DNA of 64,000 bases, taken from positions 69,381-133,380 of the forward strand of contig JAKMXF010000359.1 of assembly GCA_024704765.1 (NCBI GenBank), given 5' to 3'. The notes under the pieces are model-generated. The model searched no databases. It saw only the letters and a list, made by a program, of their open reading frames with translations, and was not told where the DNA came from. The DNA is from Oopsacas minuta (Eukaryota; Animalia; Porifera). This document shows, piece by piece, positions 9,777 through 44,413 of this stretch; the first letter of the stretch is position 1, and each line of letters starts with the position of its first letter. Made by a program: the position numbers and the translations under genes.

Positions 9777-10173
9777 TATTTTGCACCAAATACTTTCTTG
9801 TTTTCCCTTATTTTTAAACACCCTTTTCTTTCTTCTCGCTCTTGTTTCATTATTATTAGTCTTAGACAATTGGGATTTGTTGAAATAACTCCACCTTTCC
9901 TTCGTCTTTCCAAAATTTCTTATATCTGTGTGCTATCACCTTCCCTGTCTATTTTGGTTCTCTTTAGCACTCTACTGCTAACAGGTGTAAAGGCAAAATC
10001 AAATGCTTCAATTTGACTAGAGATTCCTTCATATATTCTCCTAAAAATGTCACCAGGTCACTATTTAGTTACATTTGTTAATATATTGTATTTAACAATT
10101 TTGACGCAATTTTCTACAATTGAATTGTTAAGATTAATTCTGACTTTACTTGGGAATAGAGTGGGGCCAATAA

Positions 10174-15648: not shown

Positions 15649-15772
15649 ATGAATAAGTGCTGCATTAATGATCCGGATAAACGAGCTATTCAAGCAATAT
15701 CAAAACAAATTGATAAAGATATGAAGAATTCTAAGAGGAGATTGAAGACTGAAAAGAAATTGTTATTATTGG
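15649..15772 (+). CDS. GNAQ-like: G-alpha exon 1: MNKCCINDPDKRAIQAISKQIDKDMKNSKRRLKTEKKLLLL-G
   Basis: N-terminal CC palmitoylation motif, alphaN helix, KLLLL; phase-1 donor G|GTTTGT joins in frame to exon 2. Confidence 0.88.
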
Positions 15773-21352: not shown

Positions 21353-23519
21353 TTCGGCACAGGTTGTATTTTTCTATTTTTTATTATCATTATCAGTTAC
21401 CCATAAATTCTTTTTAGTAAATTTTAAATGATGACGTCATTTTCCCACATTTTGCTGTGTTCTCAAAATTCTAGCAATTTTTTTGAAATCCACATTGTCG
21501 ATTTCCTACCATCCTTCAGACCATTATTTCGCAACAGAGATACAGGCTGCGTCAGTGCCGCTGGCAATTTTTCACGATGGCGCCTGCCTCTCATACTCAG
21601 TATATTGGGTGGCTCATTTAATGACGATCTGCAACATTATGGTATACATTTTTCCTCTTCTATTCATTCATATTGTACGGTAATACGAAAGTATTTGATT
21701 TCTTATGAAATATTCCAAAAATTCTGTTTTGATTTGTCATCTCTGAGTTAAAAAGGAATGATAAATTGGATCCACAAGTATAATTCTAATAGTTATAACC
21801 CAAACGCAAATATCAAACACAACCGCACAAAATTTGCTCCTTCAGTCTTCGTTTTGTATGGTAAACATCCTTATTTGAGCATTGTGGAAATTTGTATATA
21901 ATGTATCGAAATTCGTGATTCATAAACTAATGAAAATTCTAATTATGTAAGAATTTTTTGCGGGCCGCTTAATGTATTGTGGACCCCTGTAGTAGACAAT
22001 CCATTTTAGAAAGTCTATAACAGATTTTCCTCTATTATATTTAATTTTAGAAACTGTTTTCCGTTTTTCATAAGTTTCTCGTTCTCGGGTACATAATTAC
22101 GTATATAGTCTTCTATTAAGTAGACCAAGTATGGTTAAAGTAACTTTCTTCCATCAAAGATATCACTGATTTAATTCGTTCAATTCCACTAACCCGAAAC
22201 ATGTTTTTTGAAACTTAAGTATCATGGACTTATACTCTGAGGCTTTGGCGTACTCTTTTAATGCAGTTCTTGCGGGCAACAGTTTATAGAGAATCAAGCA
22301 AAAAATAGGAACTTCCATGAGTTGTAATATAATTGCATACAAATTCCTAATTCAAACGCTGATATTAATATCAACAATAATTAAATAGAGAGAATCCAGA
22401 CTTCATCTAGAGCTAGCCTACCCCGCACCCTGGATGTTCATATATTCAATTACCCGCACCCTAGTTTATTAAGAACATGGGGATAGCACCTGATGAAGGT
22501 CAGATTTCGCGCACCCTCATGAATAGTTCTAAAAGTCACGCACCTAGATAAAGGCTTGAGAGAATCCCTTAACGCCTGCAAAAACGATTCATAGTCACAA
22601 AGTCTTTTGGCTCAGCAAATATTTATACGTATATCTTGGAGGGAGTAGCGAGTGGACCAAAATTTAGAATGCGGCCTCTTTTGAGTATTACCCAGGAGAA
22701 AATTCGACTGTACAGGGCTTGTATTGCGCTGTTACCAGGTATATGATTGACAAAGGTTTGTAGGTGCGAACTGTGTGAAAATACTGATTTAAGCTGATTA
22801 AAGTATATATTTATATATCAGAAATTGACCAACATCTAATGTTATGATTTGGCCAACAGCCGTCTAGAGAAATCTTGGAGGTTTATAGCCCACACGAAGA
22901 CCTTATGTGGCGACGACCCTCTAAATAGCCTATAAACCATTAATAACCAGATTTTTTTACTACAAGTTACCTCAGGAAGTAGCCATAGGTATATCTGATT
23001 TATATGATATCTCCATTTATTTCACGTATATAACAAGATTAATTGAATTATTTCGGAGAAAACCATATGCACATCATCATCGTGCTCGCCAGTATACTAC
23101 GAGATTTGTGAATTTCGCTTGGCGCAACTGCAACCTCATAAAGATAAATTCAGCCTCTTACCCCTATCAGTGGCCGCGGGGTAGGCCTTACCACCGTGAA
23201 GCATATAGCATTTTCTGAATGTGGTCTAAATAGGTGAAGATCATTGTGCTCTAGAGTAAGAAATGTCTTTCTATGGGAATTTTAGGTATCACCAGATATA
23301 TTATAGTATTTAGACCTTTTTTGTCAATATGGATTACTCATATTTCCGTTTGGAGAATTTAACGACATCACTCTTGTCTCGAATTTACAGTGTTCTTCAG
23401 AATGAGTTTGCTATAAGCGTGTTCCATTGTATATAGTTTGTTCATTCAGTATAAGTTGGATATATAATGTGTCCCCTTTTGCTATACCATTATTCAGCGA
23501 AAAAAGAGCTTATAGTGTA

Positions 23520-24832
23520 CAGGGTGACAATTAAGTTCTGATCCACGAATATACTCTGTTTATTCCTAAACTAGTTATTCTTTCAATCCAAATTTTCACT
23601 GACAGTTAAAGCATATTATAATAAATCTTCCTATCCAATTCTATTCGATATAACCGCCTTTTGCCTTTACTACAGCTTTAAGTCGTCCTTGAAACCATTG
23701 GACAGATTTACGGAGTTCTTCTTACGGAATTTTCTCCCATTCTATAATCAAAGCCTCCCGTAGAGATTCCAAATTTCCATGCGGAGTAGCGCAGGCTCTG
23801 CTCTGTAAAGTCCCCCAGATGGAATAGTCAAGTGGATTCAAATCCGGACTTGAAGGAGGCCATTCTTCCCTTGGACAAAAAGTCAATATTTTCCCCTAAA
23901 AGCCAGGATTGAGTTGCTTTCGAGGCATGCGCTGGCGCAGAGTCCTGCTGGAAAATCTAGGGTGTGTTTTTGAACAAGGATGAACCAGCAGATTTGATTA
24001 CAGGCTCAAGAATAAACTCTCTTTATATGTTTGCGAGTTAATTTTGACCCCTTGTGGGACAAAAATCAATTTTGTCCGAGAATCTGCTGACACCCCAGCC
24101 CAGACCATCACAGAAAGCGGTCTTTGCACTCGATCGATGAATTTAATGCTCTCAGGGATGTCTTTGCATGGCGACACAATCATTCTATCATTTTGACGGT
24201 TAGTTGCTTCATCTACCGTGAAAATCTTCTCGTCCGAAAACAATATCTGTTCAGAATCTTCATTTATGAGGCGCCACAGAAGCCTTTTGCACCTTTCAAG
24301 TCTTTTTATCCGAAGAGTGGGAGTGAGATGATGAACTGTTTGCCGTTTGAGTGATTTAAGTCCCAGGTCCTCATGTATCATCTTTCGCAATGTTTCGCGA
24401 TTAACAGGGTATTCCCTTGCCATCTTCCGGATTGACCGCCTGGGATTTCGGCGGATTTTACTGCGGAGTTTTTCCCTTAGTGCTCTCGTACGAACTGTCG
24501 CCGGTCGGCCAGAACGAGGCTTGTCCTCCACACTTTTGGTATCGATATATCGTTTAATAGTACGATAAATGAATAATCTGTTGATCTTTTCGTTTTTCAG
24601 ATTTTTCGAAATCTCGCTCTGTGTGCTCCCGTTCATAAATAATGAGATAATTTTTGACCTCTTTACTTCCATGTTGAAATTTCTGATTTTATGCGTATGT
24701 AGATTTAGATTACTGTTTGAGCATAACAGGAAGACATATATGTTAGAATATAAATGATAGAATTATAATAGAATATATTGGAAGCGTATCAGATCTATTG
24801 GAACTATGCATCAGAACTTAATTGTCACCCTG
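23520..24832 (-). mobile_element. DD37D (maT-type) element C, full length, frameshifted
   Basis: TIR cagggtgacaattaagttctgat, TA TSD; ORF 23998-24672 ends in frameshift (ESLFLSL). Confidence 0.93.
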
Positions 24833-26033
24833 TATTGATGCAACAATGTTAATACACTACGTATCCTGCATTAATATACATAGTTGTCAACTTTTGTGAA
24901 GTTTTTTCTTGAGTTTTTTCAGATGAGTTGTATATATTTAGTTTTGAAGTGAAATGGATGTCTAATAGAGCATTTACCACCATTATTGTGCAATAGTTTT
25001 CATTTTTGTATGTATGAGGGTTTCATTCAAGTATTAAGGGTCATCCGCCTATAACTGAATAGTTAGTATTTTCATATTCCTGGACTATACATTTGTTATA
25101 CGGCATAGGCAGGTTAATAACAAAATTTCTGCACTCCTGTAGGCGCGCGGCATACGCCTGGATAAACCCATTGTATGAATCACTGTGATACCTTCAATTT
25201 CCGCTGAAATTTTAGAGTAATAGTGCAAAAATAAAAGTGATGTTGTGTTCAAATACCTGAGTTTCACTTTATATTCGTGAGATTTGACAACCATGACTAT
25301 ATTGAATCTAATTTGATGATGCATCTAAAATTCCAAATCTCGATGAGTTATGGGTAATAGTTTTGGTCTTGCGTCATAGTATAGGGATCGACCCGCGATC
25401 TTGACCCAATATCCATTGACTCTTTCTCCACACTATGATCAGTTTAAACGTTATTGGAATTGGATCTCTGTCAGCATTGAATATTTTTAGATTTAACTTC
25501 ATACTTCGTATTACAAGACGTATAACTCACATGTTTTTCATAGCATCATGGATAGCGAGTAGATGGCTATATTTTGAAATTAAGGTCCAAACACGTTAAC
25601 TACTTGTGGTATGCCCTTTAAATGTATTTCCAACACGTAATTACGCTACGCGTTTACACACTTGCCTTCTCAAAATTTCTATCTCATCATCTGACTACGT
25701 AATTTCTATTTTGCATAATTTTTTAGTAGGTTTCGCCGCTGTTTTTAGCCTTCTAATGAGTAAGTTAAGTCTTTGATATTTATGTAGTATCATGATACCA
25801 TGTAGTGGTTTCGAATAGTAGAAATTTTGATGGAATGCTGATACAGTCCACTTTTGCTATTCAAATACAAATCAGATTCAGCAATTCTGATATACAGGTG
25901 TGTATTACCCCATTATCAATTTTTCGAATTGATGCAGCCAAATATTTTAGACTTATTCCCATTTTCATTTGTGCCACAAACAGCCAAGTAGCACACCGCT
26001 AGAATATTGGCACAACAATGGAATAGTGTATGA

Positions 26034-29000
26034 CAGGCACGTAGCTAGAGCAAGACATTCAGGGGGGCAAGAAGTATTTCGGGAGGGCAATTGCAGGGAT
26101 AAATATTTTTGAAAAGTTAATTACTTGTGTATAACAAGTACGACCCAGTCTCCTTTTCTTACATGTATAACTTTTTAATTCATAAAGTACCAGATTACTA
26201 GGCTAGGGAGCATTAGATTAGTCTACATTATAGTAAGAGCATTTATTAAGATACTAAACTCAATTCAGGGATACTATTTGACATTACAAAAGAAAGCGGC
26301 GGTGCTTCATCTGCTTAAAATGTTCGATCACATCATTATAACAAAGTGTTTCTGCAATATCTTTTTCAATAGATAACAGGGCAAGATGGTTGAGACGCTC
26401 AGTGGTCATTTGTGAGCGCAAACGTGTTTTTATTCTCTTAACAGATGAGAACATTCTCTCAACTTTGCAAGACGTCTGAGGGATAGTCACAAGAATTTGG
26501 TATAAGTTGAAAACATCAGGGAAAATATCTTTGTCAATCACATCCAGTACATCGATCAAAGTATTTAGCTGAGATTCATCTTTCGAGCAATAAACGAACG
26601 GAGAACTTCTATTTCACAATCTTTGATATCTATTGCATACAGTTCAGATAGTGTATTCAATTCCTGTTTGTTAAGAAAGTTTTGAGACCTTGGTAAGCAG
26701 CAATCAGCAGCCTTCATGATGCCTGATTGATCTGTACCAAAACGGGCATCCAATCCTGCTAAGATCTCGCGGACATTTTGGCGTAACAATATTTCAAGCT
26801 CTTCAAAGTTGGATGCGTTTGTGTGTCCAACAGAGCTATTTAGATATCCTTCTCTAAACCTTTCTGGAAGACGCCGTTGCCTGATTGTGTCTCTTACATC
26901 AAAATTTTCGATTTCATATTCACCAGACAAATCTTTGGCATATTCGACAACCTTGTCAAAATCGAAATTGACCAACCTTTCCCTCAGATCGGCAAGTAAT
27001 ATCAAACAAGAAGAAACAGTTGCTGTCGACTTCTGAAAAGCTTTAGTGCAAAAATCAGAGTAATCATACAGCCTACCAAAGTAAACTAAGATGGTCATAA
27101 ATTTCTTTGTTTGTAGACTACCTAGTAAAGATTTAGCTGCTAAACTTGTGTCTGCATCATTATCATTTCCAAATATGCTTAAAGTATCAAGTATGCAATC
27201 AAACCGACGCAGAAACCTTTCCACCTCCAAAGAACGGGAAGACCAACGAGTACTACATGAACGTGCAAGTTCAAGAGCTTGGACGTTGGGGGATAGCGCT
27301 CATCCTGGACGTCTATGAAAACTGCATGTCGCTTTGTTCCATTCATGAACGAATACGTCAAATCCAATATATCAAAGAAAGATTTCATCAGAGGATGTCG
27401 TTCAGCAGTTGCAGCTAATACTAAGTTAAGCCTATGTGAAGCACAATGAACATATGTGGCATTGCGATAACCTGCTCCTTTCATGCGGGCTTGGACACCA
27501 CCGTGTATTCCTGACATAACACTAGCCCCGTCGTAACCCTGCCCTACACATTTCAGAGGATCGAGCTCAAAAGGCTTAAGTAGCTCTATCAGTTTTTCAG
27601 AGATGGTGCCCGCATCCATGTCCTTCAATTCAATAAAGCCAATAGCTCTTTCTCGGACATTACCTTTATGGATATATCGCAAAGAAGCACCTAACAACTC
27701 CTTCTTAGATGCATCTTTTACTTCGTCAGCTAGAATAGCATAACAAGACGCGATTTCTACTTCACTTTTAACATAGTCTAGAAGCACTGAAGCGAGTGAT
27801 GTAAGCAAATCATTTTGAATATCTGGACTTAGCATTTTTGCATTTCCTGGAAGACTTTCTATCCTCTTGGTCACATTGCTATCATATTTTCCTAAAAGTT
27901 CTAATATTTCAAGAAAGTTCCCTTTATTAAGCGACTGATCTGATTCATCATCTCCTCGAAGAGGAATATCTTGTTTGACACAAAAAGTAATAATGTCAAG
28001 AACAGTCATTAAATGTTTCCGATTGTCATCTATGAATTTCTCATTTCGAAAATTGGGATCCAGTTGCTTATCTACCGTCCCTATTATTTGATGAATTGGC
28101 CAGACTTTCTGTGTTTCAACAGCTGCCATATGACACACAGAACTATCGTGCTTCCTGCACTTGTCGCCAAGTTTCCTCCAGTCACAAAGTCCTTTTGTTG
28201 AAAAAGTTGCTTCAGCTGTTGATCCTCCAAAAAGCCGACACGGTTGGCAAAATATAGCATCGAGTTCTTTGCTATACTCTATCCAGGAGAATTGGGCATA
28301 CCAATGAGTACTAAAATGTCTACCGGCCTCATTTTTTGGGAAGATAATAGAAGGCTGCCTCGGTTTCTCACCATTGTTGGACAAATCATTTACAGTCACA
28401 ATTGGTGATTGTATATGAGTCGTGTTTAAACTTGGAGTTGAAATAGTTGTACAAGAATCGGAAGTTAAAGGGGTCGAAACTTGAATACTCGTAACAACAG
28501 GCTCTACCTCCTCATAATTTGAAGAGACGACATGATCTTCGATTTCTATTCGATTTCTTTTAAAATATGCCTGAACTTTGCTTTGTTGTAGTCTTTTAGT
28601 CATCTAGAATTGTTTGAGATACGAGTCACTGAACTGATTGAAGAACAGAAAATGTGAAAGATTTGATGATATAGAATGACTTTATAACTTATAGAGAATA
28701 TCTGAAATTGGCTTCACTCATGTGTAAATTTCAAAACAAGCTTTGAAAACTGAAACCCTAAGAGCATCACCAATGCTTCAATTACTTCAATGGACAGTCT
28801 AACTTCTGACAACAATTACTAGCGGTCGTGGTAATTCAATTAAAATTATAGTCGAAATTCAGTGCCTGTCAAAATAGAACAAGTTTACTATCAATGAGCG
28901 TTACTTCCTGTCTAGTATTAAAACCATCATCGCAACGCGAGTTATTAATTTCATAGTTTTGACGATGCAGTTGAAGTACATAGGCTATTAATTACAGTGG

Positions 29001-29229
29001 AGTTCGCTTATTAGCAACTCGGATTTTGCAGAGATTCGGTTGCTAATAGGACAACGAAATTAACATTATAATCCCGTTTGGGACCCGAAAGCTGGTTGCT
29101 AATAGAGCAATATTACTAATAAGCTAACTACATTGTATATAAAAACAAAACTTCCAAATTTATCTGGGGGGCGAGAAAAACTTTTGGGGGGGCGACTGCC
29201 CCCCCTTGACCCCCGTAGCTACGTACCTG
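26034..29229 (-). mobile_element. hAT element (TTF-type Zn finger / DUF4371 / dimerisation-domain transposase), left copy
   Basis: TIR cagg(c/t)acgtagcta; ORFs 27179-28603, 26565-27230, 26284-26559 (YSKELDAIFCQPC, ILADEVKD, GQGYDGASVMSG, HCASHRLNL, SCKVERMFS). Confidence 0.95.
28995..29135. mobile_element. Decayed Tigger-type MITE carried inside the hAT 5' region (twin at 32916-33056)
   Basis: TA|cagtggagttcgcttattagcaa ... ttactaataagctaactacattg|TA. Confidence 0.7.
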
Positions 29230-31465
29230 ATTTAGCCAATGAGAAAATGCCTTACTTCAACATGTACATCTAATGAGGGTCAGAATATCAGAATCGGAAA
29301 TATAAGGGGATTCAGATATTTGGGTATAGAATTATATTCTGAAAGTCATTAGATACAATAGGGGTGCAAATTATCGCTGCCATGACCCATGTTCCTAGAA
29401 ATTAATCCTACAATGAAGGGACATTTTCTCACAGGAGGCTGTTTTCATTAATGGTAAAAGTGAAATATATACAGTTAAAAATAATGGAATTGTATATTGG
29501 GAATAAATAGTTAGTATTTTATGTTTTGTTTCAACTTAGGGATTAAAATAGTTCTGGATACTACATCTTTCTAAATTTAACTCTTTGAATCATTATGAGG
29601 AAGAAAATCTATAATAGCATAGTAGTAAAATTACAATAATTTTTAATTATCTTTGTAAATTTTGCTGTTAGTGCTACGAGTGTGAAGTTGCCTAGTATTC
29701 GATAATCTGAACTTGAATCACAAATTATACTCGCCCGTACACATGAGTTAATTCAATTGGTACCATTCGATAGAGGATGGCTGAACGTTTTAGGCAATAG
29801 AAATTATTTTCAAAAATTTTGCTTTATAAAGCACAAAATTCACAAACCACAAAAATTTCAAGTATGCCAATATTAACAAGGAAATCCCCATATATTACTC
29901 CTTATTAAACCGTAATATATTTAGTAACACCAGAACTAAAATTTTTCGAGATTCCAATTATATTATACACACTGGGTTAACTTGCTATAGAGTCAATAAA
30001 AGTTGACTGTCCAGGTAGTTCAGAAGTCCAAGGTTTCAAAAAGGAGTCACTAGATGAAGGATAAATTTGAGAATACAATGTTGCGACATTCGAGGAACAT
30101 TACTGCGTAACCAGGCAAGATATATTCCCGAAAATAGTCACTAACCTCACAAAAATGTGAAATATTTCACTGATAGTACACTCGCTTAAAAAACAAAAGG
30201 AACGATCATGCATTTTGACACAGTAGAATTATCAGACACTTTGAGGTTGTTCCACAACACAAATTACTCATCCTCGGGTTTAGTTCTAACTCCAATTTCC
30301 ATTGTCGGCCACAATAGATCACTTAATCGACATACTTTGAAGGTGTTAAAATTCAGCTAACGGCCACAATCTAATCCATTCCGATATTCGTAAACAGGAT
30401 AAATTCCCAATTGGTAGATTGATCAATTCAACAGATATTGTTCATAGCAACGGAAAAATATCTCAGGAATATGAAAATATTACATTCTCAAAATTATACG
30501 CGTGTTACTCACATATTTTGTCATTGAAGCGATTATGCAAAATGGACATATTTATAATGGACGGGATAATTATTAGTTTGTGTCAGACCGATTATATACA
30601 TTATCCTTCACAAATATTCTTAGGTAATTAATAAAATAGATCAAATGATTACCACACCTGTCTATTATGGTTAAAATCTATAGCGATCACCTGTATGCAA
30701 CCGCTACTTTAAATAGCTCCTTCTGTGGACGTTAGAGATCACCTGGGAATCTTTGTTAATTCCAGGGGTCTAACCGGGAAATTATAACACATTTATATAA
30801 TAATAAAATTTAAACCAAGGTTGGATCCGAATAGTTAAATATTCGGTTACCAACAGAATATTAGTACGTATTAGATATTCAGTCGGCTGAAACCGAATAG
30901 TATCAGTAGTCTTCAGTTGAATCAAAAGAATATTATCAGTATAGGTTAAGGCTACCATTCATGAATATACTGATATAAGGCGTGAGGGGTTTCAACCTTG
31001 CTTAGCATTTACCGAGAGTTTGCAGTCATTAGATTGAACATGAAATATAAAAATCACGATTTAAAGTGCAAGGTAATTATAGACTTTGAAATAGTAGTCT
31101 GAATTCCTGCAATACTTTTAGAACTAAATACTATTTCTAACCTCAGAATTATGGCCATTTGCTATAACAATAGTTCACAACATATTGAATAAATAGATTA
31201 GATCTTTTTATTACGCATGTTTATGTAGCATTAAATCCCGGGCTCAATCCTGTCCGGGAAAAATATTTTCCAAATAGATAACTAGTGGCAGTTATAGACA
31301 AGTTGACAATACAAGTTGTACTTGTCCCTGCAAGATGTAGGCAAGTTAGATCTGAGTTTTCATAGTTATATGCACAAGCCATCTTCATTCTGGGAATTAC
31401 GCTGCTGAAACGAGGCAGGAAGTTCTAATCATCTTTGGAATTAGATGCCTTCAGTAATCGCAATA

Positions 31466-31866
31466 CAGTATTTCCTTGAATAGTAGCCAGGGGCATTATA
31501 CGTCTCAAGGACCATAAGAGGAGGTTAAGGCATTTGTAAATAGGTTAATTTGTTAAAAAGGTTAATTTTGTTTTGTAATCCGTACTTGTTTTTATCCCAA
31601 GTCAAGGCAGCAAGAAGATTTAAATTGGTCAGGGTGACCAATACAAAATATATTGAGTTATTAAAGTTGGCCCCGATGAGCTAATACTAGTCTTATTAGC
31701 AGTCAAGGATTGGCCCAGTTGAAACATGACAGACAAGAGCGTTTCCCACGGCCAGGAAAGTAAAAGTAGTTAAATGAATATACAGAGAAGGAATTATTCT
31801 TTTAGGTATATATAAGAATTTCTTACGCTCTCAGGAGGTGAAGGGGCTCTATTCAGGGAAATATGG
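31466..31866. mobile_element. pogo/Tigger-type MITE in the inverted spacer
   Basis: TA|cagtatttccttgaatag ... ctattcagggaaatatgg|TA. Confidence 0.5.
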
Positions 31867-32819
31867 TATCTCATAACTAAAACCCTTTCTTCTAAATAGT
31901 AAGGGGAATAACAACAATACTCTCGAACTAGTTTGGGAAATTACACATAATCCAGAGGAGAAAGTTCAACGTTGAGATCAATCAACTATCAAATGCTATA
32001 CTCCAATTACATACTTACATCTACGTACTATGTATTTGCATGACTCTAACTGGAATTAGATAACTTATTTTTTTGCAGACTATTTTGATGTAAATGCAGT
32101 ACACCATCAATTACCTGAGCACCTTTGAATACACTTTCAAGTTATGTGTTGGAAAACTGAAATAGAATATTTTCCTATATAAATATCACTGCTTATGCAT
32201 ATCCAATATACAAGATTTTGGAATTTGAATATATGAATGTATACCTTCGCCCTATGGGTGTAAGATGGTCACATCATTCGTAGACCTAGTTCTAAAGTAA
32301 TATAAAGCAGGCTTCTGAGATGAAGGTGGAATAATTTTGAATATACACTAATCGAACACAATTACTTGCACACCACAATAAATACAATTCTAAATCCTGG
32401 AAACAGGGCGAATATTTGATTTTGCAAACTATAATATCCCTCAAAGAACTATTCGGCTAGGAAAATTAACTTTTCCTGCCCAAGTAGTATTTTAGAATTA
32501 CACATTTTAAAGCTTGACTATATTAAATAGATAATGAGTTATGAATATCTATTCCACTCTTAATTGTACAAAATTCAAATGAGATGGAGCAATTTAGATC
32601 TAAGGATGTGTATTACTCCAGTATCAATTTTTCGAACTGATTAGAGTAAATCTTGTTGACTTGTTAGCATTTTCATATTTATGCAACAAGTGACAGAAGT
32701 GGCACATTCGAAAGTATGTATGCACAACTTCGTATGTTGATTAATATGTTCAAAATCGACATATCAAACTATACAAATATTTTAAATTTGTTTAGAGAGT
32801 GGTAAGTGATTTCATACAC

Positions 32820-35800
32820 CAGGTACGTAGCTACGGGGGGGGCAAGGGGGGGCAGTCGCCCCCCCAAAAGTTTTTCCCGCCCCCCAGATAAATTTGGAAG
32901 TTTTGTTTTTATATACAATGTAGTTAGCTTATTAGTAATATTGCTCTATTAGCAACCAGCTTTCGGGTCCCAAACGGGATTATAATGTTAATTTCGTTGC
33001 CCTATTAGCAACCGAATCTCTGCAAAATCCGAGTTGCTAATAAGCGAACTCCACTGTAATTAATAGCCTATGTACTTCAACTGCATCGTCAAAACTATGA
33101 AATTAATAACTCGCGTTGCGATGATGGTTTTAATACTAGACAGGAAGTAACGCTCATTGATAGTAAACTTGTTCTATTTTGACAGGCACTGAATTTCGAC
33201 TATAATTTTAATTGAATTACCACGACCGCTAGTAATTGTTGTCAGAAGTTAGACTGTCCATTGAAGTAATTGAAGCATTGGTGATGCTCTTAGGGTTTCA
33301 GTTTTCAAAGCTTGTTTTGAAATTTACACATGAGTGAAGCCAATTTCAGATATTCTCTATAAGTTATAAAGTCATTCTATATCATCAAATCTTTCACATT
33401 TTCTGTTCTTCAATCAGTTCAGTGACTCGTATCTCAAACAATTCTAGATGACTAAAAGACTACAACAAAGCAAAGTTCAGGCATATTTTAAAAGAAATCG
33501 AATAGAAATCGAAGATCATGTCGTCTCTTCAAATTATGAGGAGGTAGAGCCTGTTGTTACGAGTATTCAAGTTTCGACCCCTTTAACTTCCGATTCTTGT
33601 ACAACTATTTCAACTCCAAGTTTAAACACGACTCATATACAATCACCAATTGTGACTGTAAATGATTTGTCCAACAATGGTGAGAAACCGAGGCAGCCTT
33701 CTATTATCTTCCCAAAAAATGAGGCCGGTAGACATTTTAGTACTCATTGGTATGCCCAATTCTCCTGGATAGAGTATAGCAAAGAACTCGATGCTATATT
33801 TTGCCAACCGTGTCGGCTTTTTGGAGGATCAACAGCTGAAGCAACTTTTTCAACAAAAGGACTTTGTGACTGGAGGAAACTTGGCGACAAGTGCAGGAAG
33901 CACGATAGTTCTGTGTGTCATATGGCAGCTGTTGAAACACAGAAAGTCTGGCCAATTCATCAAATAATAGGGACGGTAGATAAGCAACTGGATCCCAATT
34001 TTCGAAATGAGAAATTCATAGATGACAATCGGAAACATTTAATGACTGTTCTTGACATTATTACTTTTTGTGTCAAACAAGATATTCCTCTTCGAGGAGA
34101 TGATGAATCAGATCAGTCGCTTAATAAAGGGAACTTTCTTGAAATATTAGAACTTTTAGGAAAATATGATAGCAATGTGACCAAGAGGATAGAAAGTCTT
34201 CCAGGAAATGCAAAAATGCTAAGTCCAGATATTCAAAATGATTTGCTTACATCACTCGCTTCAGTGCTTCTAGACTATGTTAAAAGTGAAGTAGAAATCG
34301 CGTCTTGTTATGCTATTCTAGCTGACGAAGTAAAAGATGCATCTAAGAAGGAGTTGTTAGGTGCTTCTTTGCGATATATCCATAAAGGTAATGTCCGAGA
34401 AAGAGCTATTGGCTTTATTGAATTGAAGGACATGGATGCGGGCACCATCTCTGAAAAACTGATAGAGCTACTTAAGCCTTTTGAGCTCGATCCTCTGAAA
34501 TGTGTAGGGCAGGGTTACGACGGGGCTAGTGTTATGTCAGGAATACACGGTGGTGTCCAAGCCCGCATGAAAGGAGCAGGTTATCGCAATGCCACATATG
34601 TTCATTGTGCTTCACATAGGCTTAACTTAGTATTAGCTGCAACTGCTGAACGACATCCTCTGATGAAATCTTTCTTTGATATATTGGATTTGACGTATTC
34701 GTTCATGAATGGAACAAAGCGACATGCAGTTTTCATAGACGTCCAGGATGAGCGCTATCCCCCAACGTCCAAGCTCTTGAACTTGCACGTTCATGTAGTA
34801 CTCGTTGGTCTTCCCGTTCTTTGGAGGTGGAAAGGTTTCTGCGTCGGTTTGATTGCATACTTGATACTTTAAGCATATTTGGAAATGATAATGATGCAGA
34901 CACAAGTTTAGCAGCTAAATCTTTACTAGGTAGTCTACAAACAAAGAAATTTATGACCATCTTAGTTTACTTTGGTAGGCTGTATGATTACTCTGATTTT
35001 TGCACTAAAGCTTTTCAGAAGTCGACAGCAACTGTTTCTTCTTGTTTGATATTACTTGCCGATCTGAGGGAAAGGTTGGTCAATTTCGATTTTGACAAGG
35101 TTGTCGAATATGCCAAAGATTTGTCTGGTGAATATGAAATCGAAAATTTTGATGTAAGAGACACAATCAGGCAACGGCGTCTTCCAGAAAGGTTTAGAGA
35201 AGGATATCTAAATAGCTCTGTTGGACACACAAACGCATCCAACTTTGAAGAGCTTGAAATATTGTTACGCCAAAATGTCCGCGAGATCTTAGCAGGATTG
35301 GATGCCCGTTTTGGTACAGATCAATCAGGCATCATGAAGGCTGCTGATTGCTGCTTACCAAGGTCTCAAAACTTTCTTAACAAACAGGAATTGAATACAC
35401 TATCTGAACTGTATGCAATAGATATCAAAGATTGTGAAATAGAAGTTCTCCGTTCGTTTATTGCTCGAAAGATGAATCTCAGCTAAATACTTTGATCGAT
35501 GTACTGGATGTGATTGACAAAGATATTTTCCCTGATGTTTTCAACTTATACCAAATTCTTGTGACTATCCCTCAGACGTCTTGCAAAGTTGAGAGAATGT
35601 TCTCATCTGTTAAGAGAATAAAAACACGTTTGCGCTCACAAATGACCACTGAGCGTCTCAACCATCTTGCCCTGTTATCTATTGAAAAAGATATTGCAGA
35701 AACACTTTGTTATAATGATGTGATCGAACATTTTAAGCAGATGAAGCACCGCCGCTTTCTTTTGTAATGTCAAATAGTATCCCTGAATTGAGTTTAGTAT

Positions 35801-36017
35801 CTTAATAAATGCTCTTACTATAATGTAGACTAATCTAATGCTCCCTAGCCTAGTAATCTGGTACTTTATGAATTAAAAAGTTATACATGTAAGAAAAGGA
35901 GACTGGGTCGTACTTGTTATACACAAGTAATTAACTTTTCAAAAATATTTATCCCTACAATTGCCCTCCCGAAATACTTCTTGCCCCCCTGAATGTCTTG
36001 CTCTAGCTACGTGCCTG
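32820..36017 (+). mobile_element. hAT element, right copy (inverted twin of 26034-29229)
   Basis: Same TIRs; all three ORF translations identical to the left copy, including two shared frameshifts. Confidence 0.95.
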
Positions 36018-37102
36018 GACTAAATTGTGGATTTAATTGATATTATCGGTGTTTTTGTCTTCCAAACTGCGAGTTAGAAAATATACAATTACCATCTCCA
36101 AAAACATTGACCTAATGAAATCACCTACTTTCATTCTTTTTCAATATTACCTTTTCTATCTGGTAGAACATTAACTGGCGTATTGATTTACACAAAATTA
36201 TTCACTTCCTTCAAGGTATTAATTGCATATAATATGCCTATTGAAAATCATTTTTTCCCGGGTAATAAAGTACATTATTTCATTTTACTTGATAAGTGCT
36301 ACCTCCAATATCAAGGTTATTCTCAATAACCTTGATATTGGATTTAGTGCTCTCATATTATATGTATTTTCAAAATGCCTACAAAAGGGATACCTTTGCC
36401 TGTAAGTTACGCCAATTAATTTTACAGTTTCATCCTCAAATTCCTTAGATATTTTGTTACTAATTTCTATCTCTATGCAAATTATTGCCAGTCAATTTAG
36501 AAATCTCTGATTATTTTATGTTGTAACTTGTTGCAGTTAATTGTAATTGATCTGCCTCATTTACCACAGACTAATTATAGAATGCTCAAGAAGTCTTGAT
36601 TTCAAAATTTCAAAATTTTCATATGGGTAGTACTAGTCCATGTTGTTTAACGATAATATCTGAATTGCTGCTAATCATTCTAATTCTGAGCATTTTATTA
36701 GTTGATCAATTTTATTAATTCCATACATACCTAAGATTGTAGTTCTCAATTGTATAACTAATTCCTAGAATTCTTAGAAAGTTCGTGAATAAGTGCCATG
36801 AACTAGATCGATATCTTTCATCACTTCATTTAGTTTAATGAAACTGATTGTAGAAGATACAGACTCAATCATTGCCACCATGTGCCACTTGTTCCCATCT
36901 TTTTGCAATGGGGGCAATTGAAAAACGTGGTACAATAGTGATACTCGACGTTAATTTTCAAACATTTCAATATCTAATAGAATATTCAAGCATCTTCAAT
37001 TGTAAATTCGGATGTGCCATTGTCAGAACTAGATTGCAACTTCTCATTTAATGCATATCCAATTCTGCAATTATTCGATTTAGTTTATTACTTGTTTTTT
37101 AG

Positions 37103-37287
37103 GTACTGGTGAAGCTGGAAAGACCACATTTATTAAACAAATGAGGATAATTCATGGAGTTGAGTATGACGAAAATGAAATATTAGAGTTTAAAAAAACT
37201 ATTTTTCAAAATATTTATGACGCTATTGCAAAATTAGGAGATGCAATGATTGAGTTCAAAATATCTTATAGGACAAATCTCCCTGAG
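37103..37287 (+). CDS. GNAQ-like: G-alpha exon 2: GTGEAGKTTFIKQMRIIHG...YRTNLPE
   Basis: P-loop and KQMRIIHG; acceptor ttttttag, donor GTAAGT; 185 nt. Confidence 0.96.
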
Positions 37288-37667
37288 GTAAGTGTCTCCT
37301 TTAGAATTTTGATTGCCTATCGTTTCTGAAGTGATATGTGGCAATGTAGTAAGTTCAGCAAATTTGATCATGGATTTGTGACCCCTCCCTCAAGTAAACA
37401 CTTGTATCTATAGAACCGTTGGGTTTTACTCGAAGGATAGTATTTTATCATTGTAGAAATTCATTTCTTCGATTAGAGTTCTAAAATTTGGAAATTCTGC
37501 CAATTATTTTGTCTATATTACTCATTATTTTCGAAATTTTCTGCGTCTTATCTGTATATCCAATGTAATGCTAAAAACTAACATTGAAATCAAATTTTAT
37601 ATTATCAAATGATGTTTTACAAATATACAAATTTATTTTGCATAATTTGCACATTCCTGAATAATTA

Positions 37668-38962
37668 CAAGGGTTGTTCAATAAATAGTGAGACTGTTTT
37701 TCATAATTCATATAGTAACCCGATACTTATCATAATTGATTATCAAATGTTTCGATAAATTCCCCCTTAAACTATATGCATCGTTTCCATCGTTTTGGTA
37801 ACTTTTCCATCCCAGTGTGGTATAGAATTCTTTAGGTGTCCCTTTTTCCCACTGTTTTCTTTCGTACTCCAGCCGTTTGAAATCCTCAAATCCCTTCCCT
37901 CGAAGAGGTCCCCTCATCTCTCCAAACAGCCAGTAGCCGCTGGGAGCCAGGTCTGGACTATGCGGGGATGAGGGAGGCATTCAAACCCTAAGTCGTCAAT
38001 TGCAGTCATTGTCTTGGAGCTTACATGGGGCCTTGCGTTGTCATGTTGCAGCAGTACGCCACGTGTTAACTTTCTCTCGCCTCTCACGTTTATTCGCTTG
38101 ACGCAATTCGTTCAATTCGTCAACGTAATAATCACTGTTCATGGTTGTCTTCTCAGGCAACCAGTCGAGGTGGATAATTCCTTCCCTATCCCAAAGTACT
38201 GTTGTCACTCTCTTCCCTGCTGATTTTGCGGCCTTTACTTTGATATGTACCAGTTCATCACGTCCCTTCCACTGCTTCGATTGAGTTTTACCCTCTGGTT
38301 CATAATAATGAAACCAAGTTTAATCCCCCTTTACTATACGTTCCAAAAGTCTTCCTCTACCAGATATCATGAAAGTAATTCTTTGCTAACTCTGACCCTT
38401 TCGCGTTTTTGTTCTTTTGAAAGAAGTTTCGAGACGCAACGCGCAGTTACCTTCGACATTTCCAGATCTTCAGTAATAATCGAGTGTAGTGTGGCTTTTG
38501 ATATACCTACCCTCTCTTCTAACTCTCGCAGGGTTATTCGTCTGTCCTCCTCGATATTTCTGCGGGTTTTGGAGGAAGTCGCACAACCTGGAAGAGGATC
38601 ATCGTGGCGGACCTTATCGCCATTATCAAAACGTTCGATCCATCTATATATGGTGGCTTTCGAAGGACATTCATCTCCGAAAATATCCTGCATTTCACGA
38701 ATAATGTATGAGTCAGTCTTCCCCTTTTTCCACAGGTACCAAAATATTTGTCGTTTTCCTTCTTTGCTAAAATCCACTAGTTAAAAAAAGTAGCCTATGC
38801 AAATGAAACTTTATACTGAAGAATATGCTAGGAGAGTAAAGAGTATTGTGTATAGAAGTTAGACAATCAAGTTAGGCTTGTAATCTGATATTAGGCTTAG
38901 AGCTGTATTAACTAGAATATGAATCCGATACATTAGTCTTATTACTTATTGAACAACCATTG
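37668..38962 (-). mobile_element. mariner (DD34D-type) element G, defective
   Basis: TIR caagggttgttcaataa; fragments 38367-38777 and 37708-37980; HDNARPH...SPDLAPSGYW (third Asp replaced by Gly). Confidence 0.92.
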
Positions 38963-40081: not shown

Positions 40082-42759
40082 CAAGGGTTGTTCAATAAGT
40101 AATGAGACTAATGTATCGGATTCATATTCTAGTTAATACAGCTCTAAGCCTAATATCAGATTACAAGCCTAACTTGATTGTCTAACTTCTATACACAATA
40201 CTCTTTACTCTACTAGCATATTCTTCAGTATAAAGTTTCATTTGCATAGGCTACTTTTTTTAACTAGTGGATTTTAGCAAAGAAGGAAAACGACAAATAT
40301 TTTGGTACCTGTGGAAAAAGGGGAAAACTGACTCATACATTATTCGTGAAATGCAGGATATTTTCGGAGATGAATGTCCTTCGAAAGCCACCATATATAG
40401 ATGGATCGAACGTTTTGATAATGGCGATAAGGTCCGCCACGATGATCCTCTTCCAGGTTGTGCGACTTCCTCCAAAACCCGCAGAAATATCGAGGAGGAC
40501 AGACGAATAACCCTGCGAGAGTTAGAAGAGAGGGTAGGTATATCAAAAGCCACACTACACTCGATTATTACTGAAGATCTGGAAATGTCGAAGGTAACTG
40601 CGCGTTGCGTCTCGAAACTTCTTTCAAAAGAACAAAAACGCGAAAGGGTCAGAGTTAGCAAAGAATTACTTTCATGATATCTGGTAGAGGAAGACTTTTG
40701 GAACGTATAGTAAAGGGGGATTAAACTTGGTTTCATTATTATGAACCAGAGGGTAAAACTCAATCGAAGCAGTGGAAGGGACGTGATGAACTGGTACATA
40801 TCAAAGTAAAGGCCGCAAAATCAGCAGGGAAGAGAGTGACAACAGTACTTTGGGATAGGGAAGGAATTATCCACCTCGACTGGTTGCCTGAGAAGACAAA
40901 CCATGAACAGTGATTATTACGTTGACGAATTGAACGAATTGCGTCAAGCGAATAAACGTGAGAGGCGAGAGAAAGTTAACACGTGGCGTACTGCTGCAAC
41001 ATGACAACGCAAGGCCCCATGTAAGCTCCAAGACAATGACTGCAATTGACGACTTAGGGTTTGAATGCCTCCCTCATCCCCGCATAGTCCAGACCTGGCT
41101 CCCAGCGGCTACTGGCTGTTTGGAGAGATGAGGGGACCTCTTCGAGGGAAGGGATTTGAGGATTTCAAACGGCTGGAGTACGAAAGAAAACAGTGGGAAA
41201 AAGGGACACCTAAAGAATTCTATACCACACTGGGATGGAAAAGTTACCAAAACGATGGAAACGATGCATATAGTTTAAGGGGGAATTTATCGAAACATTT
41301 GATAATAGTTATATACAAAATTGTGGAACGATTTTGATGATTAAATGACAATAGCTGAAATTGAAGAATTTGAAGGGATTGCTTATGAATGGGTTAAGTA
41401 TATATCCACAACAGGTCTAGAATTTGTAATTTTCTAGTTGGAAGATTGTACCAATATGCGATTAAATATATATGAAATTAAACATACAGTTATGTTTATT
41501 ACCAACTAAATCATATCAACATTTACTATCACTAGTACGCTGTGCTTCCTTGCGCTACGCGGATTCTAACACTTCGTGTCTGTACTCGGCCTTCGGCCCT
41601 CGCTTTCACTATTAGTTTGTGTGATATTCGGATTCAGCGTAACCCGATTACCCCATAATAACCGTTGAAACCACGTTTCCAGGATTATTTTGAAATTTGT
41701 TTACTTTTCGTTTACTTTATATTCATATAAACAACTAAAATTTGTATGACAAATCCATGAGTGTGATTCGGATTCAGCATATTCGCTAACCTTCCGTCAA
41801 GTTTATGAAATTTGTATATTTTCTTGATTAACACCATAGATATATAGATACATGCATTTTTGCAACTACGAATTCCACATTCCATTCCAGCTTCCCTAGC
41901 AACGGACAAACGGACAGACAGACAGATAAACAGATAGCAGCGACAATGATAGTATCTCCATTACTATCATTGTCACTGCAAATGTCCAATATTTCAAATG
42001 GAACTGTGCAGGTAGGTCCTCTGAATGTGGAACTGGCCTAATGGCGGACGGTACGTCTGGTTACGCAATAGTGGATTTATTCTTTATTGTGATACCATCA
42101 ATTTTCGTCATCCAGTAATGACAATCTGAAAGAAGACACATTGGTTCTCTCCATATCATTGGAACCGCAAACGGGATTATATTTCTCTTCCCAGCATACC
42201 ACAAGCGTCTTTCAGGCATTGTGTGCAGCCCACGGCTTATCTTGATCCCCGAGATGGCATCCAAAATTAGCGAAATAACAGTTTTCTACAGCTTTTGTGA
42301 TTTTGTCATTGGTTAGTTGTAGTATACCTCCCACAAATATAACAATACTTTTCGGAGAATTTTTGCAAACCAGAGAAGCCATAAACAATAAAATGAACGA
42401 AATATACTAAATGTCGAGTGGAATAAAACAGATTATAACTACTATTAGAGGCAATTTAGATCATGTAAGCAATGAAACCAAATAAATTGGATGTTGATGT
42501 GTAGAATTGAATTTAGAAATATTTTTGACCATGTGGTCAGCTAAAAGATCGGCATAACTAAAATAGAAATTTCTTACTTTTAGTACCCTCGAGAACGAAA
42601 AACATTGATAATAATTCCCAACATATATCTACACTATGCAAAACACTAGAGAAAGAAGATCATTAAGAATGTTGTATATCAGTGTAATCAATTATGATAT
42701 ATATCGGTTTACTATATGAAATATGAAAAACAGTCTCAGTATTTATTGAACAGCCCTTG
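40082..42759 (+). mobile_element. mariner element H (inverted twin of G) carrying a 1.38-kb Chapaev-derived insertion near its 3' end
   Basis: TA|caagggttgttcaataag ... tattgaacagcccttg|TA; ORF fragments identical to G. Confidence 0.92.
41306..42684 (-). mobile_element. Non-autonomous Chapaev3-type derivative, copy 2
   Basis: Homologous to 10174-11542; TAA TSD (41303-05, 42685-87); the empty site gaTAAtcaattatg is visible in sister element G. Confidence 0.88.
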
Positions 42760-44246
42760 TAAGTGGATATTGACAAAACATATGTCATTTATCGTCTCTC
42801 CTGTTACTCAGAACCGTGCCAAATTTATCATGACAAACCTTTGGATATTTTCTCCAGAAACTGTTTGAATCATTTAGTATTTCAACATTTGATCAAATAT
42901 CAATATTTTGGCTAAATTAGTGTTTGCTATAGAAATATATTGGCACATTTCGAAAGAATTTGCTTTTCCTTACTGATGGTATGTATTTCTTTTGGGAAAT
43001 TCATATTTTCTATGGTGACTTAGCTTATGGTCAGAATCATGGCTTAAGGATATTTATCACATCGAAGGGTACCTGTGATTCAAATTTCAAATTTGATATT
43101 CTACAAGCTGACAATCATGTTTTAATTTCGCCATTGATTGAATTTCCCCCAAGACTCGAACTTGTCCGAGTTGGCCCAAAATACCTATGTATGCTTAAAA
43201 TCTGCCATGGGGGTCTTCCATTCTCTTCTAACAATTCTGGACCTACTAACATATATTACATGCTTAAATTTATATTGAGATTAATTGAGTTTTCATTGTA
43301 TAGATTCGTGTATTAATCGGCTCAGAGCTCATGAAAGTTTATTTCGATCTTTCATGATCAGAGGGAGTTTACTATTTCATGCAATTGTAGTACTTTTATA
43401 TTTCTTCTTTTATGTACCTGCAGTGGAATCCGGATTTATCCTAATTCTTTCCAAAATTTATTTGTCTGGAAGTATACTTCTTATACACTTCCTTGTTTTA
43501 TTTTAATGAAGAGAACAGATATTTCTTTTGACTCACTTTCAAAATTTGTGCTTTGTATTTTTATTTTCATTGATTACAATCCATCCTGGCAAAATTATTG
43601 AACAAGACTGTCTTTGTCCATTACGAATTGCCCTACCGCACATTTTTCCCAATATTGTTTTATTTAGGGCCGATCCCTCGTTTAAGAAGTGTTTTCAATG
43701 GCACTTGTATTTAGCAATAATATTACCCATTCATATGTTATTAATATGTTAGATATCTAAACTAAGTTATACAAGCTTTTTTACTTTGCCCAATGGATAC
43801 CAAGTGGCCCCTTTTGATACAAAGATTTTTGTAATTGAATTTTTATGTTCATTCTTTTATTCATTCTTTTATTCTGCCTTTTGTATGACTAAAATCAAAT
43901 TGTCTATAGCGACTCCTAATGTTTGGAATTTCTTCTTCCCACACAAAATCATGTCCCACAATGGCTGTTCATTTGGAACAATTTACTGCTAACTCCTGAT
44001 TAAGCGAATAGATTTTAGCCATCATTTGGTGTTCGTATTTTCATGTTTCACTGTACTTATTTTTTGTACGGTTAAACCTTCAGGAAGTTAACACTCTGGA
44101 ACAGCCAAATGTTCACATATGAGAGGTGTTCACTTTGAGAAAGAGAAAGTGTGCTCATCTTTTGGAGGTGTTCACTTTTGTACATTTATTTGTACTCCCT
44201 GTTCATCTAATTCAGTTTTGAGTTCTTTTAATGTGTATTTCTTTAG

Positions 44247-44413
44247 GATATAATGAACGAATTGTTTGATGTTACTGGAGCTGGAATAGTCGAATTGCCT
44301 TCAATTATTCCTAACCATCATGTTGATGCAATCCAGAGATTTTGGAGTGATGATGGTATACAAGAATGTTTCCGTAGAAGAAGTCAATTTCAACTCATTG
44401 ATTCCGCACAGTA
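44247..44413 (+). CDS. GNAQ-like: G-alpha exon 3: DIMNELF...AIQRFWSDDGIQECFRRRSQFQLIDSAQ-Y
   Basis: Helical-domain motif W.D.GIQECF.RR..FQL.DSA; acceptor tttctttag, donor GTGAGT; 167 nt. Confidence 0.96.

What the first reader, a model, noticed from the sequence alone, without database searches (positions are those of the whole stretch)
26026..36025. 3.6-kb intronic inversion between inverted hAT twins, proven by exchanged TSDs
Neither hAT copy has matching 8-bp flanks, but the flanks are swapped. The outer-left flank gtgtatga (26026-33) is the reverse complement of tcatacac, the inner flank of the right copy (32812-19). The inner flank of the left copy, atttagcc (29230-37), is the reverse complement (7/8) of the outer-right flank gactaaat (36018-25). 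Independent support: 25870-26000 and 32575-32710 are homologous in direct orientation (gtgtattacccc/tcca.tatcaatttttcgaa.tgat). They become the two arms of an old foldback around the left insertion site once spacer 29230-32819 is flipped back. TSD exchange is the established signature of TE-mediated inversion (Drosophila buzzatii Galileo breakpoints), or of alternative/intramolecular transposition.
Basis: partly seen in the sequence, partly recalled or inferred. Interest (0 to 1): 0.85.

Follow-up and report, generated by a model that had tools for sequence, protein, structure and literature searches.

The report
Transposon twins flanking a flipped intron segment
Two near-identical hAT transposon copies in an intron of a glass-sponge G-protein gene have swapped target-site duplications, the known mark of a transposon-made 3.6-kb inversion, but no data available here can show that the flipped orientation is real and not an assembly choice.

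Summary
Copy L is 26034-29229 and copy R is 32820-36017, inverted. The 8-bp flanks do not match within a copy (3/8 each) but match crosswise as reverse complements (8/8 and 7/8; chance about 2e-8). Seven solo copies of the same family elsewhere in this assembly (Oopsacas minuta, GCA_024704765.1) have ordinary direct 8-bp duplications, so the swap is a true exception.

The pair lies in a 21.3-kb intron 1 of a G-alpha gene. An old foldback that rejoins when the spacer is flipped, and the spacer's opposite A/T skew, both indicate that the assembled orientation is derived.

The twins share 13 private variants, including two frameshifts in the transposase. They differ at only four places, all within 180 bp of the ends.

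One sequenced library lacks the left flank/hAT junction, so the insertion is young and polymorphic. The assembly mixes haplotypes that differ by about 1.7%.

K-mer contigs cannot span the 3.2-kb repeat, so the orientation is untested. My estimate is:
- real inversion, about 0.62 (one-step hybrid-end transposition 0.35, ectopic recombination 0.27);
- assembly mis-orientation, about 0.30.

The mechanism is known from Drosophila, maize and rice. Other first-stage notes report similar swapped flanks elsewhere in this genome; I did not check them.

The parts
15650..15771 (+). G-alpha exon 1 (context; defines the 5' end of intron 1)
   Evidence: ATG...KKLLLLG followed by a GT donor. It joins exon 2 in phase.
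25863..25995 (+). Left arm of an old foldback beside insertion site 1
   Evidence: 74.6% identical to 32571-32706 in direct orientation. The two arms pair as a hairpin once the spacer is flipped back.
26026..26033 (.). Outer-left flank GTGTATGA (target duplication 1)
   Evidence: Reverse complement of 32812-32819, 8/8.
26034..29229 (+). hAT copy L, 3196 bp; 14-bp terminal inverted repeat CAGGCACGTAGCTA / CAGGTACGTAGCTA; transposase on the - strand, broken into three reading frames
   Evidence: Pfam DUF4371 and hAT dimerisation domain. 97.4-99.0% identical to eight other copies. Two frameshifts shared by both twins only, at 27288-9 and 26583.
29230..29237 (.). Inner-left flank ATTTAGCC (reverse complement of target duplication 2, 7/8)
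29238..32811 (.). Spacer, the segment that is flipped in the assembly
   Evidence: No ORF of 80 aa or more and no G-alpha exon. A/T skew is +0.052, against -0.11 in both immediate flanks.
32571..32706 (+). Right arm of the old foldback, now 6.7 kb from its partner
32812..32819 (.). Inner-right flank TCATACAC (reverse complement of target duplication 1)
32820..36017 (-). hAT copy R, 3198 bp, inverted twin of copy L
   Evidence: Differs from copy L at 4 places only, all within 180 bp of the ends.
36018..36025 (.). Outer-right flank GACTAAAT (target duplication 2)
37103..37287 (+). G-alpha exon 2 (context; 3' end of intron 1)
   Evidence: AG acceptor, GTGEAGKTTFIKQMRIIH..., GTAAGT donor.

Best explanation
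The inversion is genuine, young and carried on the transposon-bearing haplotype, and it was made in one step by hybrid-end (sister-chromatid) alternative transposition of a single defective hAT copy. After replication, transposase supplied in trans pairs the left end of the copy on one chromatid with the right end of the copy on the sister. These ends insert into a target 3.6 kb away on the same chromatid, in the orientation that re-joins the chromatid. The product has two identical copies in opposite orientation and an inverted segment between them. The old 8-bp duplication then sits at outer-left and, reversed, at inner-right. The new duplication sits reversed at inner-left and at outer-right. 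Shown here: the swapped flanks, the twin status of the copies, the normal duplications of solo copies, the polymorphism of the insertion, and its intronic, exon-free position. Inferred: that the assembled orientation exists in a real chromosome, and that the route was one-step and not recombination. Real inversion by either route is about 0.62; this route alone is about 0.35.
For: Flanks are swapped 8/8 and 7/8, while direct matches are 3/8. Seven solo copies of the family in the same assembly have direct 8-bp duplications: six are 8/8 and one is 7/8, so a 7/8 match is not unusual. The twins share 13 variants absent from 7 other copies. They are identical over the central 2956 bp, whereas other copies differ pairwise at 20-52 sites. 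The Galileo study states that hybrid element insertion gives the same outcome as ectopic recombination except that the copies are identical, not chimeric. The family is active. It has tens of copies by contig depth, intact 772-aa transposase copies exist (L006), and the A-flank/hAT junction is present in runs X2 and X3 but absent from X1. The shared GG frameshift is seen in reads of X2 and X3, so it is not an assembly error (table 4). The path chosen by the assembler contradicts the simple arrangement in which each copy keeps its own duplication. Producing it would therefore have needed positive long-range support from PacBio or mate-pair data, both of which were used.
Against: No spanning read was seen. 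Logan contigs break at the element's ends. The interior identity could be partly a collapsed repeat edge used twice. All four L/R differences lie within 180 bp of the ends (chance about 1.6e-4 if uniform), which fits polishing that only reaches near unique flanks. Hybrid-end transposition of a single element is documented for P elements. For hAT it is documented mainly with paired or fractured elements. The parental single-copy chromosome has not been seen.
Confidence: 0.35

Rival explanations
1. Assembly mis-orientation. The real transposon-bearing chromosome has two ordinary insertions, each with its own 8-bp duplication, made by local re-insertion in opposite orientation. The assembler threaded the 3.6-kb spacer the wrong way between two indistinguishable 3.2-kb inverted arms.
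For: All four junctions are the same in both orientations, so short reads cannot decide (reasoning). The assembly was built with SPAdes 3.9 (k up to 99) from Illumina and corrected PacBio reads, then SSPACE, Pilon and GapFiller, with different adults for each library. At this locus it is a mosaic. The spacer follows the X1 haplotype, while the junction-proximal flank follows X2/X3, about 1.7% apart, and X1 lacks the junction. The element has tens of copies. Twin differences lie only near the ends, as expected for a collapsed repeat polished from its flanks. Other first-stage notes list many swapped-flank or transposon-bounded flips in this assembly, some said to split genes (unverified).
Against: There are no Ns in the window. 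Seven of seven solo copies are threaded to matching flanks. Interior differences are preserved in the other two twin pairs of the window, so the assembler does not always collapse repeats. The twin interior carries private, non-consensus variants, which gap-filling from multi-copy reads would not give. SPAdes normally stops instead of guessing when no long-range support exists (my own knowledge of the program, not tested here).
Confidence: 0.3
2. A real inversion by ectopic (non-allelic homologous) recombination between two independently inserted, oppositely oriented copies, as for Galileo in Drosophila buzzatii and for inverted Ds pairs in rice. It may flip repeatedly.
For: Opposite orientation and exchanged duplications are the expected footprint. 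In rice, 11% of rearrangements at an inverted Ds pair were recombination-made inversions of the inter-transposon segment. The 3.2-kb arms of near-identity only 3.6 kb apart are a good substrate. Identity of the interior with differences only at the ends would also fit arm-to-arm gene conversion.
Against: This route needs three recent events (two insertions of the same private sub-lineage, then a crossover) within the short time implied by zero differences over 2956 bp. No chimerism can be shown. No two-copy unflipped haplotype was seen.
Confidence: 0.27
3. Something else: a more complex history (for example nested rearrangements on a haplotype not represented), or breakage and repair at the element's ends unrelated to transposase.
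For: Another copy (L010) carries a 1.33-kb inversion with one breakpoint inside the element, only a 4-nt overlap and no long inverted repeat at the breakpoints. Small inversions by other routes therefore occur, or are assembled, in this genome.
Against: Here both breakpoints coincide to the base with the element's termini, and both duplications are accounted for.
Confidence: 0.08

Closest known systems
Galileo-bounded inversions 2j, 2q7 and 2z3 of Drosophila buzzatii (Delprat et al. 2009, PMC2775673)
   Same: Two copies of one cut-and-paste family in opposite orientation at the breakpoints, with reciprocally exchanged target-site duplications, while solo copies have perfect duplications.
   Different: Galileo is a P-superfamily element with 7-bp duplications, and its inversions are megabase-scale. 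Its copies were shown to be chimeric, and non-inverted chromosomes were sequenced. Here the element is hAT with 8-bp duplications, the segment is 3.6 kb and intronic, the copies look identical, and neither the parental chromosome nor the orientation has been verified.
Hybrid element insertion of P elements (Gray, Tanaka and Sved 1996; Gray 2000; as cited in PMC2775673) and sister-chromatid transposition of Ac/Ds
   Same: Ends from sister copies at one site insert nearby. The outcome is an inversion flanked by two identical, oppositely oriented copies with the same flank pattern.
   Different: These were shown experimentally in flies and, for hAT, mostly with paired or fractured Ac/Ds ends in maize and rice. 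There is no experiment here, and the transposase must act in trans because both twins are frameshifted.
Inverted Ds pairs at rice OsRLG5 (Xuan et al., PMC3239180 and PMC3429523)
   Same: A hAT element. Closely linked, inversely oriented pairs arose from a single insertion at about 1%, and the inter-transposon segment was then inverted by homologous recombination.
   Different: That was a transgenic, tissue-culture setting. Here it is a natural population of a sponge.
Inversion by intramolecular replicative transposition of bacterial elements (Tn3, Mu, IS families; established knowledge, not tested here)
   Same: The topology is identical: a second inverted copy, an inverted intervening segment, and a new duplication split in opposite orientation.
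   Different: That chemistry is replicative (a Shapiro intermediate). hAT elements cut and paste, so a replicated sister copy has to supply the second element.

Membership tests
hAT superfamily transposon | 8-bp target-site duplication | tested here: met
   Seven solo copies (L003-L009) have direct 8-bp duplications, six at 8/8 and one at 7/8.
hAT superfamily transposon | Short terminal inverted repeats | tested here: met
   14-bp CAGGCACGTAGCTA at both ends. The twins carry one private change in the right-end repeat.
hAT superfamily transposon | Transposase with the hAT C-terminal dimerisation domain | tested here: met
   PF05699 at 9.7e-09 and PF14291 (DUF4371) at 3.4e-25. Intact 772-aa versions occur in other copies. 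The transposase is frameshifted in the twins.
Inversion by ectopic recombination between transposon copies (Galileo criteria) | Two copies in opposite orientation at the breakpoints, with exchanged duplications | tested here: met
Inversion by ectopic recombination between transposon copies (Galileo criteria) | Both copies chimeric | tested here: inconclusive
   The copies are identical over 2956 bp, and the four differences, polarised with 7 outgroup copies, fit either history. The interior identity may be partly an assembly effect.
Inversion by ectopic recombination between transposon copies (Galileo criteria) | Non-inverted chromosomes carry one copy of each target and no element | not testable with these tools
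   Run X1 lacks the A-flank/hAT junction words (2 of 8, against 8 of 8 in X2 and X3). Its contig stops at 26033 with 22 unaligned letters, but those letters could not be read.
Hybrid-end (sister-chromatid) alternative transposition | Same flank pattern, with identical and not chimeric copies | tested here: met
   13 shared private variants and 4 differences near the ends. The caveat is possible repeat collapse.
Hybrid-end (sister-chromatid) alternative transposition | Parental chromosome with a single copy at one of the two sites | not testable with these tools
   No such haplotype was accessible.
Assembly mis-orientation across an inverted repeat | Arms longer than reads and k-mers, and indistinguishable inside | tested here: met
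   The arms are 3.2 kb with 2956 bp identical. The assembly used k up to 99 and 150-bp reads.
Assembly mis-orientation across an inverted repeat | No spanning long read or mate pair supports the assembled order | not testable with these tools
   Only Logan k=31 contigs were served, and none spans the element.

The most novel reading that the evidence does not exclude
In Oopsacas minuta, hybrid-end (sister-chromatid) transposition may be a routine outcome for several cut-and-paste superfamilies. Inverted twins with swapped duplications and kilobase micro-inversions would then be pervasive and still segregating. This locus would be a natural case in which the empty ancestral haplotype (the X1 individual) and the twin/flipped haplotype coexist. 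That would allow a direct test of one-step transposition against recombination in a wild animal.
Probability: 0.2. Interest if true: 0.6.

Novelty: new member of a known kind. Interest (0 to 1): 0.35.

Why it matters
If real, this is a clean, very young, selectively neutral example of a transposon-made micro-inversion in an early-branching animal, with the ancestral haplotype probably still present in the same population. It would show that active hAT elements reshape introns of a genome described as compact. It would also give a natural test between one-step alternative transposition and recombination. If it is an assembly effect, it is a warning. This reference genome mixes haplotypes from several individuals, so the orientation of segments between near-identical inverted transposon copies should not be trusted without long-read checks. 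That would also bear on the other swapped-flank notes made on this genome.

Tried and rejected
1. Fetching the read-derived contigs themselves. I looked up small ORFs of the left flank and of the spacer, and the 474-aa transposase piece, as exact proteins. None is on record, so the 22 letters that follow 26033 in run X1 stayed unread.

2. Testing orientation with reads. Only k=31 Logan contigs of three 2023 runs exist, and no piece spans the element.

3. An exon inside the spacer as an orientation marker. There is none: tblastn with four full-length G-alpha proteins finds exons only at 37.1, 44.3 and 62.9 kb, all on the + strand.

4. Other copies of the old foldback as an intact template. None was found in about 150 kb of other loci. 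Nothing crosses reconstructed site 2 either.

5. The 'goes back' joint 31100 to 25863 in X1 and X3. I considered that the spacer might really continue into a copy of the left arm. I rejected this as most likely a paralogous alignment of the right arm. It starts exactly where the arm homology starts. Shared 31-mers would have broken the left-flank contigs. X1 holds 95% of the spacer's words. The mismatch tables do not fully fit this reading, so it remains partly unexplained.

6. The 2:1 depth ratio of flank to spacer in X1 as a sign of hemizygosity. I rejected it because a contig's depth is a flat mean that a repeat at its far end can inflate.

7. A palindromic PacBio chimera as the source of the twin. 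I rejected it because the four unique flanks are all different and the left junction is present in Illumina-type runs.
Full report
**1.

The two arms are found as an inverted repeat, 26034-29214 and 32837-36017. Aligning the complete elements, 26034-29229 against the reverse complement of 32820-36017, gives three substitutions and one small indel in a C run.

- Each element starts and ends with a 14-bp inverted terminus (CAGGCACGTAGCTA).
- The four 8-bp flanks are GTGTATGA, ATTTAGCC, TCATACAC and GACTAAAT.
- Within a copy the flanks match at 3 of 8 positions. Crosswise, as reverse complements, they match 8/8 and 7/8.
- At this base composition the joint chance of the cross matches is about 1.7e-8.
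25863-25995 and 32571-32706 are 74.6% identical in direct orientation. When the element is removed and the spacer turned round, they become the two arms of one long hairpin of -138.6 kcal/mol.

**2. What the element is**

The - strand of copy L carries a transposase in three reading-frame pieces. It has a DUF4371 domain and a hAT dimerisation domain.

The closest proteins are 'zinc finger MYM-type 1-like' models of Oopsacas minuta. The window is identical to GCA_024704765.1, contig JAKMXF010000359.1.

I fetched eight more copies of the family from other contigs.

- Seven are solo copies, 97.4-99.0% identical to the twins.
- The family therefore behaves as a normal hAT. The swap is an exception, and one mismatch in a duplication is not unusual.
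- The eighth copy (L010) carries its own 1.33-kb inversion, with one breakpoint inside the element.

Against seven outgroup copies the twins share 13 private variants. These include a GG insertion and a C deletion that break the transposase frame. The twins differ from each other at four places, whereas other copies differ pairwise at 20-52. They are true twins of one defective sub-lineage and must be moved by transposase from intact copies. A 772-aa transposase model exists, for example in L006.

**3. Where the pair lies**

G-alpha exons lie on the + strand at 15650-15771, 37103-37287, 44289-44411 and 62848-62973.

Exon 1 ends ...KKLLLLG with a GT donor. Exon 2 follows an AG and continues TGEAGKTT. 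The two join in phase and rebuild the P-loop.

The pair therefore lies in a 21.3-kb intron 1, and the spacer holds no exon. The public annotation splits the gene into 88-aa and 136-aa models. This is probably because its RNA mapping allowed introns of at most 5 kb.

**4. Which orientation is ancestral**

Three lines agree that the assembled orientation is derived:

- the swapped duplications;
- the foldback that rejoins when the spacer is flipped;
- more weakly, strand composition.

On composition, the sense strand of the introns has more T than A (mean A/T skew -0.059; both immediate flanks -0.11). All six 1-kb windows of the spacer are positive, with an overall skew of +0.052.

None of these lines says whether the flip happened in the sponge or in the assembler.

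**5. What the reads show and cannot show**

Three runs of one study hold the spacer, but only as k=31 contigs. Laid on 25200-31100, they show the following.

- **Copy number.** The element is present in tens of copies. Contig depths are 1300-6000 against 35-140 for the flanks.
- **Left junction in X2 and X3.** In these runs the left-flank contigs run 29 letters into the element.
- **Left junction in X1.** The flank contig stops exactly at 26033, followed by 22 letters that do not fit the element. A word search across the junction confirms this: X2 and X3 hold 8 of 8 sampled words, X1 only 2 of 8.
- **Twin-specific variants.** X1 shows none of them. X2, and for the GG insertion also X3, show them at a low depth of about 20-140.
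- **Haplotypes.** X2 and X3 differ from the assembly by about 1.7% in flank and spacer, where X1 is nearly identical to it.

The insertion is therefore polymorphic among the sequenced animals. [quoted passage not shown] The assembled locus is a mosaic: its spacer bases follow the transposon-free haplotype, and its junctions follow the transposon-bearing one.

Orientation cannot be read from these data. Each of the four junctions is the same in both orders, and no contig spans the 3.2-kb element.

**6. Is the flip real?**

Points for an artefact:

- The assembly is a de Bruijn hybrid (SPAdes, k up to 99), followed by SSPACE, Pilon and GapFiller, and it mixes individuals.
- The element has a high copy number.
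- The twin differences lie only within 180 bp of the ends. Uniform scatter would give this with a chance of about 1.6e-4. It is the pattern expected when a collapsed repeat is polished only from its unique flanks.
- Other first-stage notes list many similar flips in this genome, some said to break genes. I could not check these, and I give them no weight as evidence.

Points against an artefact:

- There are no gaps in the window.
- All seven solo copies are threaded to matching flanks.
- Interior differences are kept in the two other twin pairs of the window.
- The twin interior carries non-consensus variants that gap-filling from multi-copy reads would not produce.
- Both the transposon-free order and the simple two-insertion order would place 32811 next to the left element. 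Choosing 29230 instead should therefore have needed positive PacBio or mate-pair support.

I put a real inversion at about 0.62 and a mis-orientation at about 0.30.

**7. How it arose, if real**

Two known routes give exactly this footprint, and the Galileo study sets them side by side.

- **Ectopic recombination** between two oppositely oriented insertions leaves chimeric copies.
- **Hybrid element insertion** uses one end from each sister copy at a single site. It leaves identical copies and creates the second copy, the inversion and the swapped flanks in one event.

I derived the topology step by step and it matches the locus. The old duplication lies at outer-left and, reversed, at inner-right. 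The new duplication lies reversed at inner-left and at outer-right.

The one-step route needs fewer events and fits twins that share 13 private variants with no sign of chimerism on a young, still polymorphic haplotype. I favour it slightly: 0.35 absolute, against 0.27 for recombination.

Recombination remains quite possible. Inverted Ds pairs in rice invert their inter-transposon segment by homologous recombination at an appreciable rate. Arm-to-arm gene conversion would also explain an identical interior.

**8. Comparison and verdict**

The element is a member of the hAT superfamily on all three defining features tested. The rearrangement works like the transposon-bounded inversions of Drosophila buzzatii, the P-element hybrid insertions, and the Ac/Ds alternative transpositions of maize and rice.

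Nothing in its anatomy is new. What is new is the host (a glass sponge), the small, neutral, intronic scale, and the likely presence of the ancestral haplotype in the same data set.

It is a new member of a known kind, of modest interest, and its reality still rests on an unverified assembly path.

**9. Dead ends**

- Exact-protein look-ups did not retrieve the read contigs.
- No intact copy of the foldback was found elsewhere.
- No independent marker crosses reconstructed site 2.
- A 'goes back' joint from the spacer contigs to 25863 is most simply the right foldback arm aligned onto the left one. The mismatch tables do not fully agree with that reading, so I list it as unexplained.

Noticed in passing
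window 37739-38962 and 40082-41306: Second inverted twin pair: a mariner-type element with Transposase_1, 99.6% identical arms and a 1.1-kb spacer, in intron 2 of the same gene. It is nested inside a 78-bp inverted repeat (37665-37742 / 42685-42762), next to a 1.4-kb stretch 92% like 10170-11548.
   Followed up: partly
window 23518-24762 and 57195-58440: Third inverted twin pair. The element starts TA|CAGGGTGACAATT, is about 1.25 kb, and has 13 differences spread along its length. The arms are 32.4 kb apart, in introns 1 and 3. The segment between them carries exons 2 and 3 in the correct + orientation, so this pair is not flipped.
   Followed up: partly
window 15650-15771, 37103-37287, 44289-44411, 62848-62973: The G-alpha gene spans more than 47 kb, with introns of 21, 7 and 18 kb full of transposons. 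This is unusual for a genome described as compact. The public annotation splits it into 88-aa and 136-aa models with a doubtful first exon at 36362-36403.
   Followed up: partly
window 26503-28737: Contigs of all three runs join about 26503/26506 to 28733/28737, skipping 2229-2230 bases. This indicates an internally deleted, Ds-like derivative of this hAT family in the genome (table 5).
   Followed up: no
L010:9373-13063: Another copy of the family is split. Element positions 835-3196 run one way. Positions 1-838, with the reverse-complemented duplication (TCTCACTA / TAGTGAGA) and 491 bp of flank, run the other way. This is a 1.33-kb inversion with a 4-nt overlap and no long inverted repeat at the breakpoints. 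A 37-nt inverted repeat (9000-9036 / 13141-13177) brackets the whole structure.
   Followed up: partly
window 25200-31100: The libraries carry different haplotypes. X2 and X3 differ from the assembly at about 1.7% of positions in flank and spacer, and X1 at almost none. Close to the left junction the assembly instead follows X2/X3. The reference is a fine-scale mosaic of individuals.
   Followed up: partly
window 25863-25933 and about 32571-32641: In X1 and X3 the spacer contigs end with 71 letters that the tool lays on 25863-25933 ('goes back 5238'), with only one listed mismatch (25929 T>C). The assembly's own right arm differs from the left arm at about 13 of those 71 positions. This is probably a paralogous alignment, but the tables do not fully fit.
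   Followed up: partly
window 29260-29300: All runs break their contigs here, and several contigs with unrelated continuations share this roughly 40-nt stretch. It is a short dispersed repeat lying right beside insertion site 2 (table 7).
   Followed up: no
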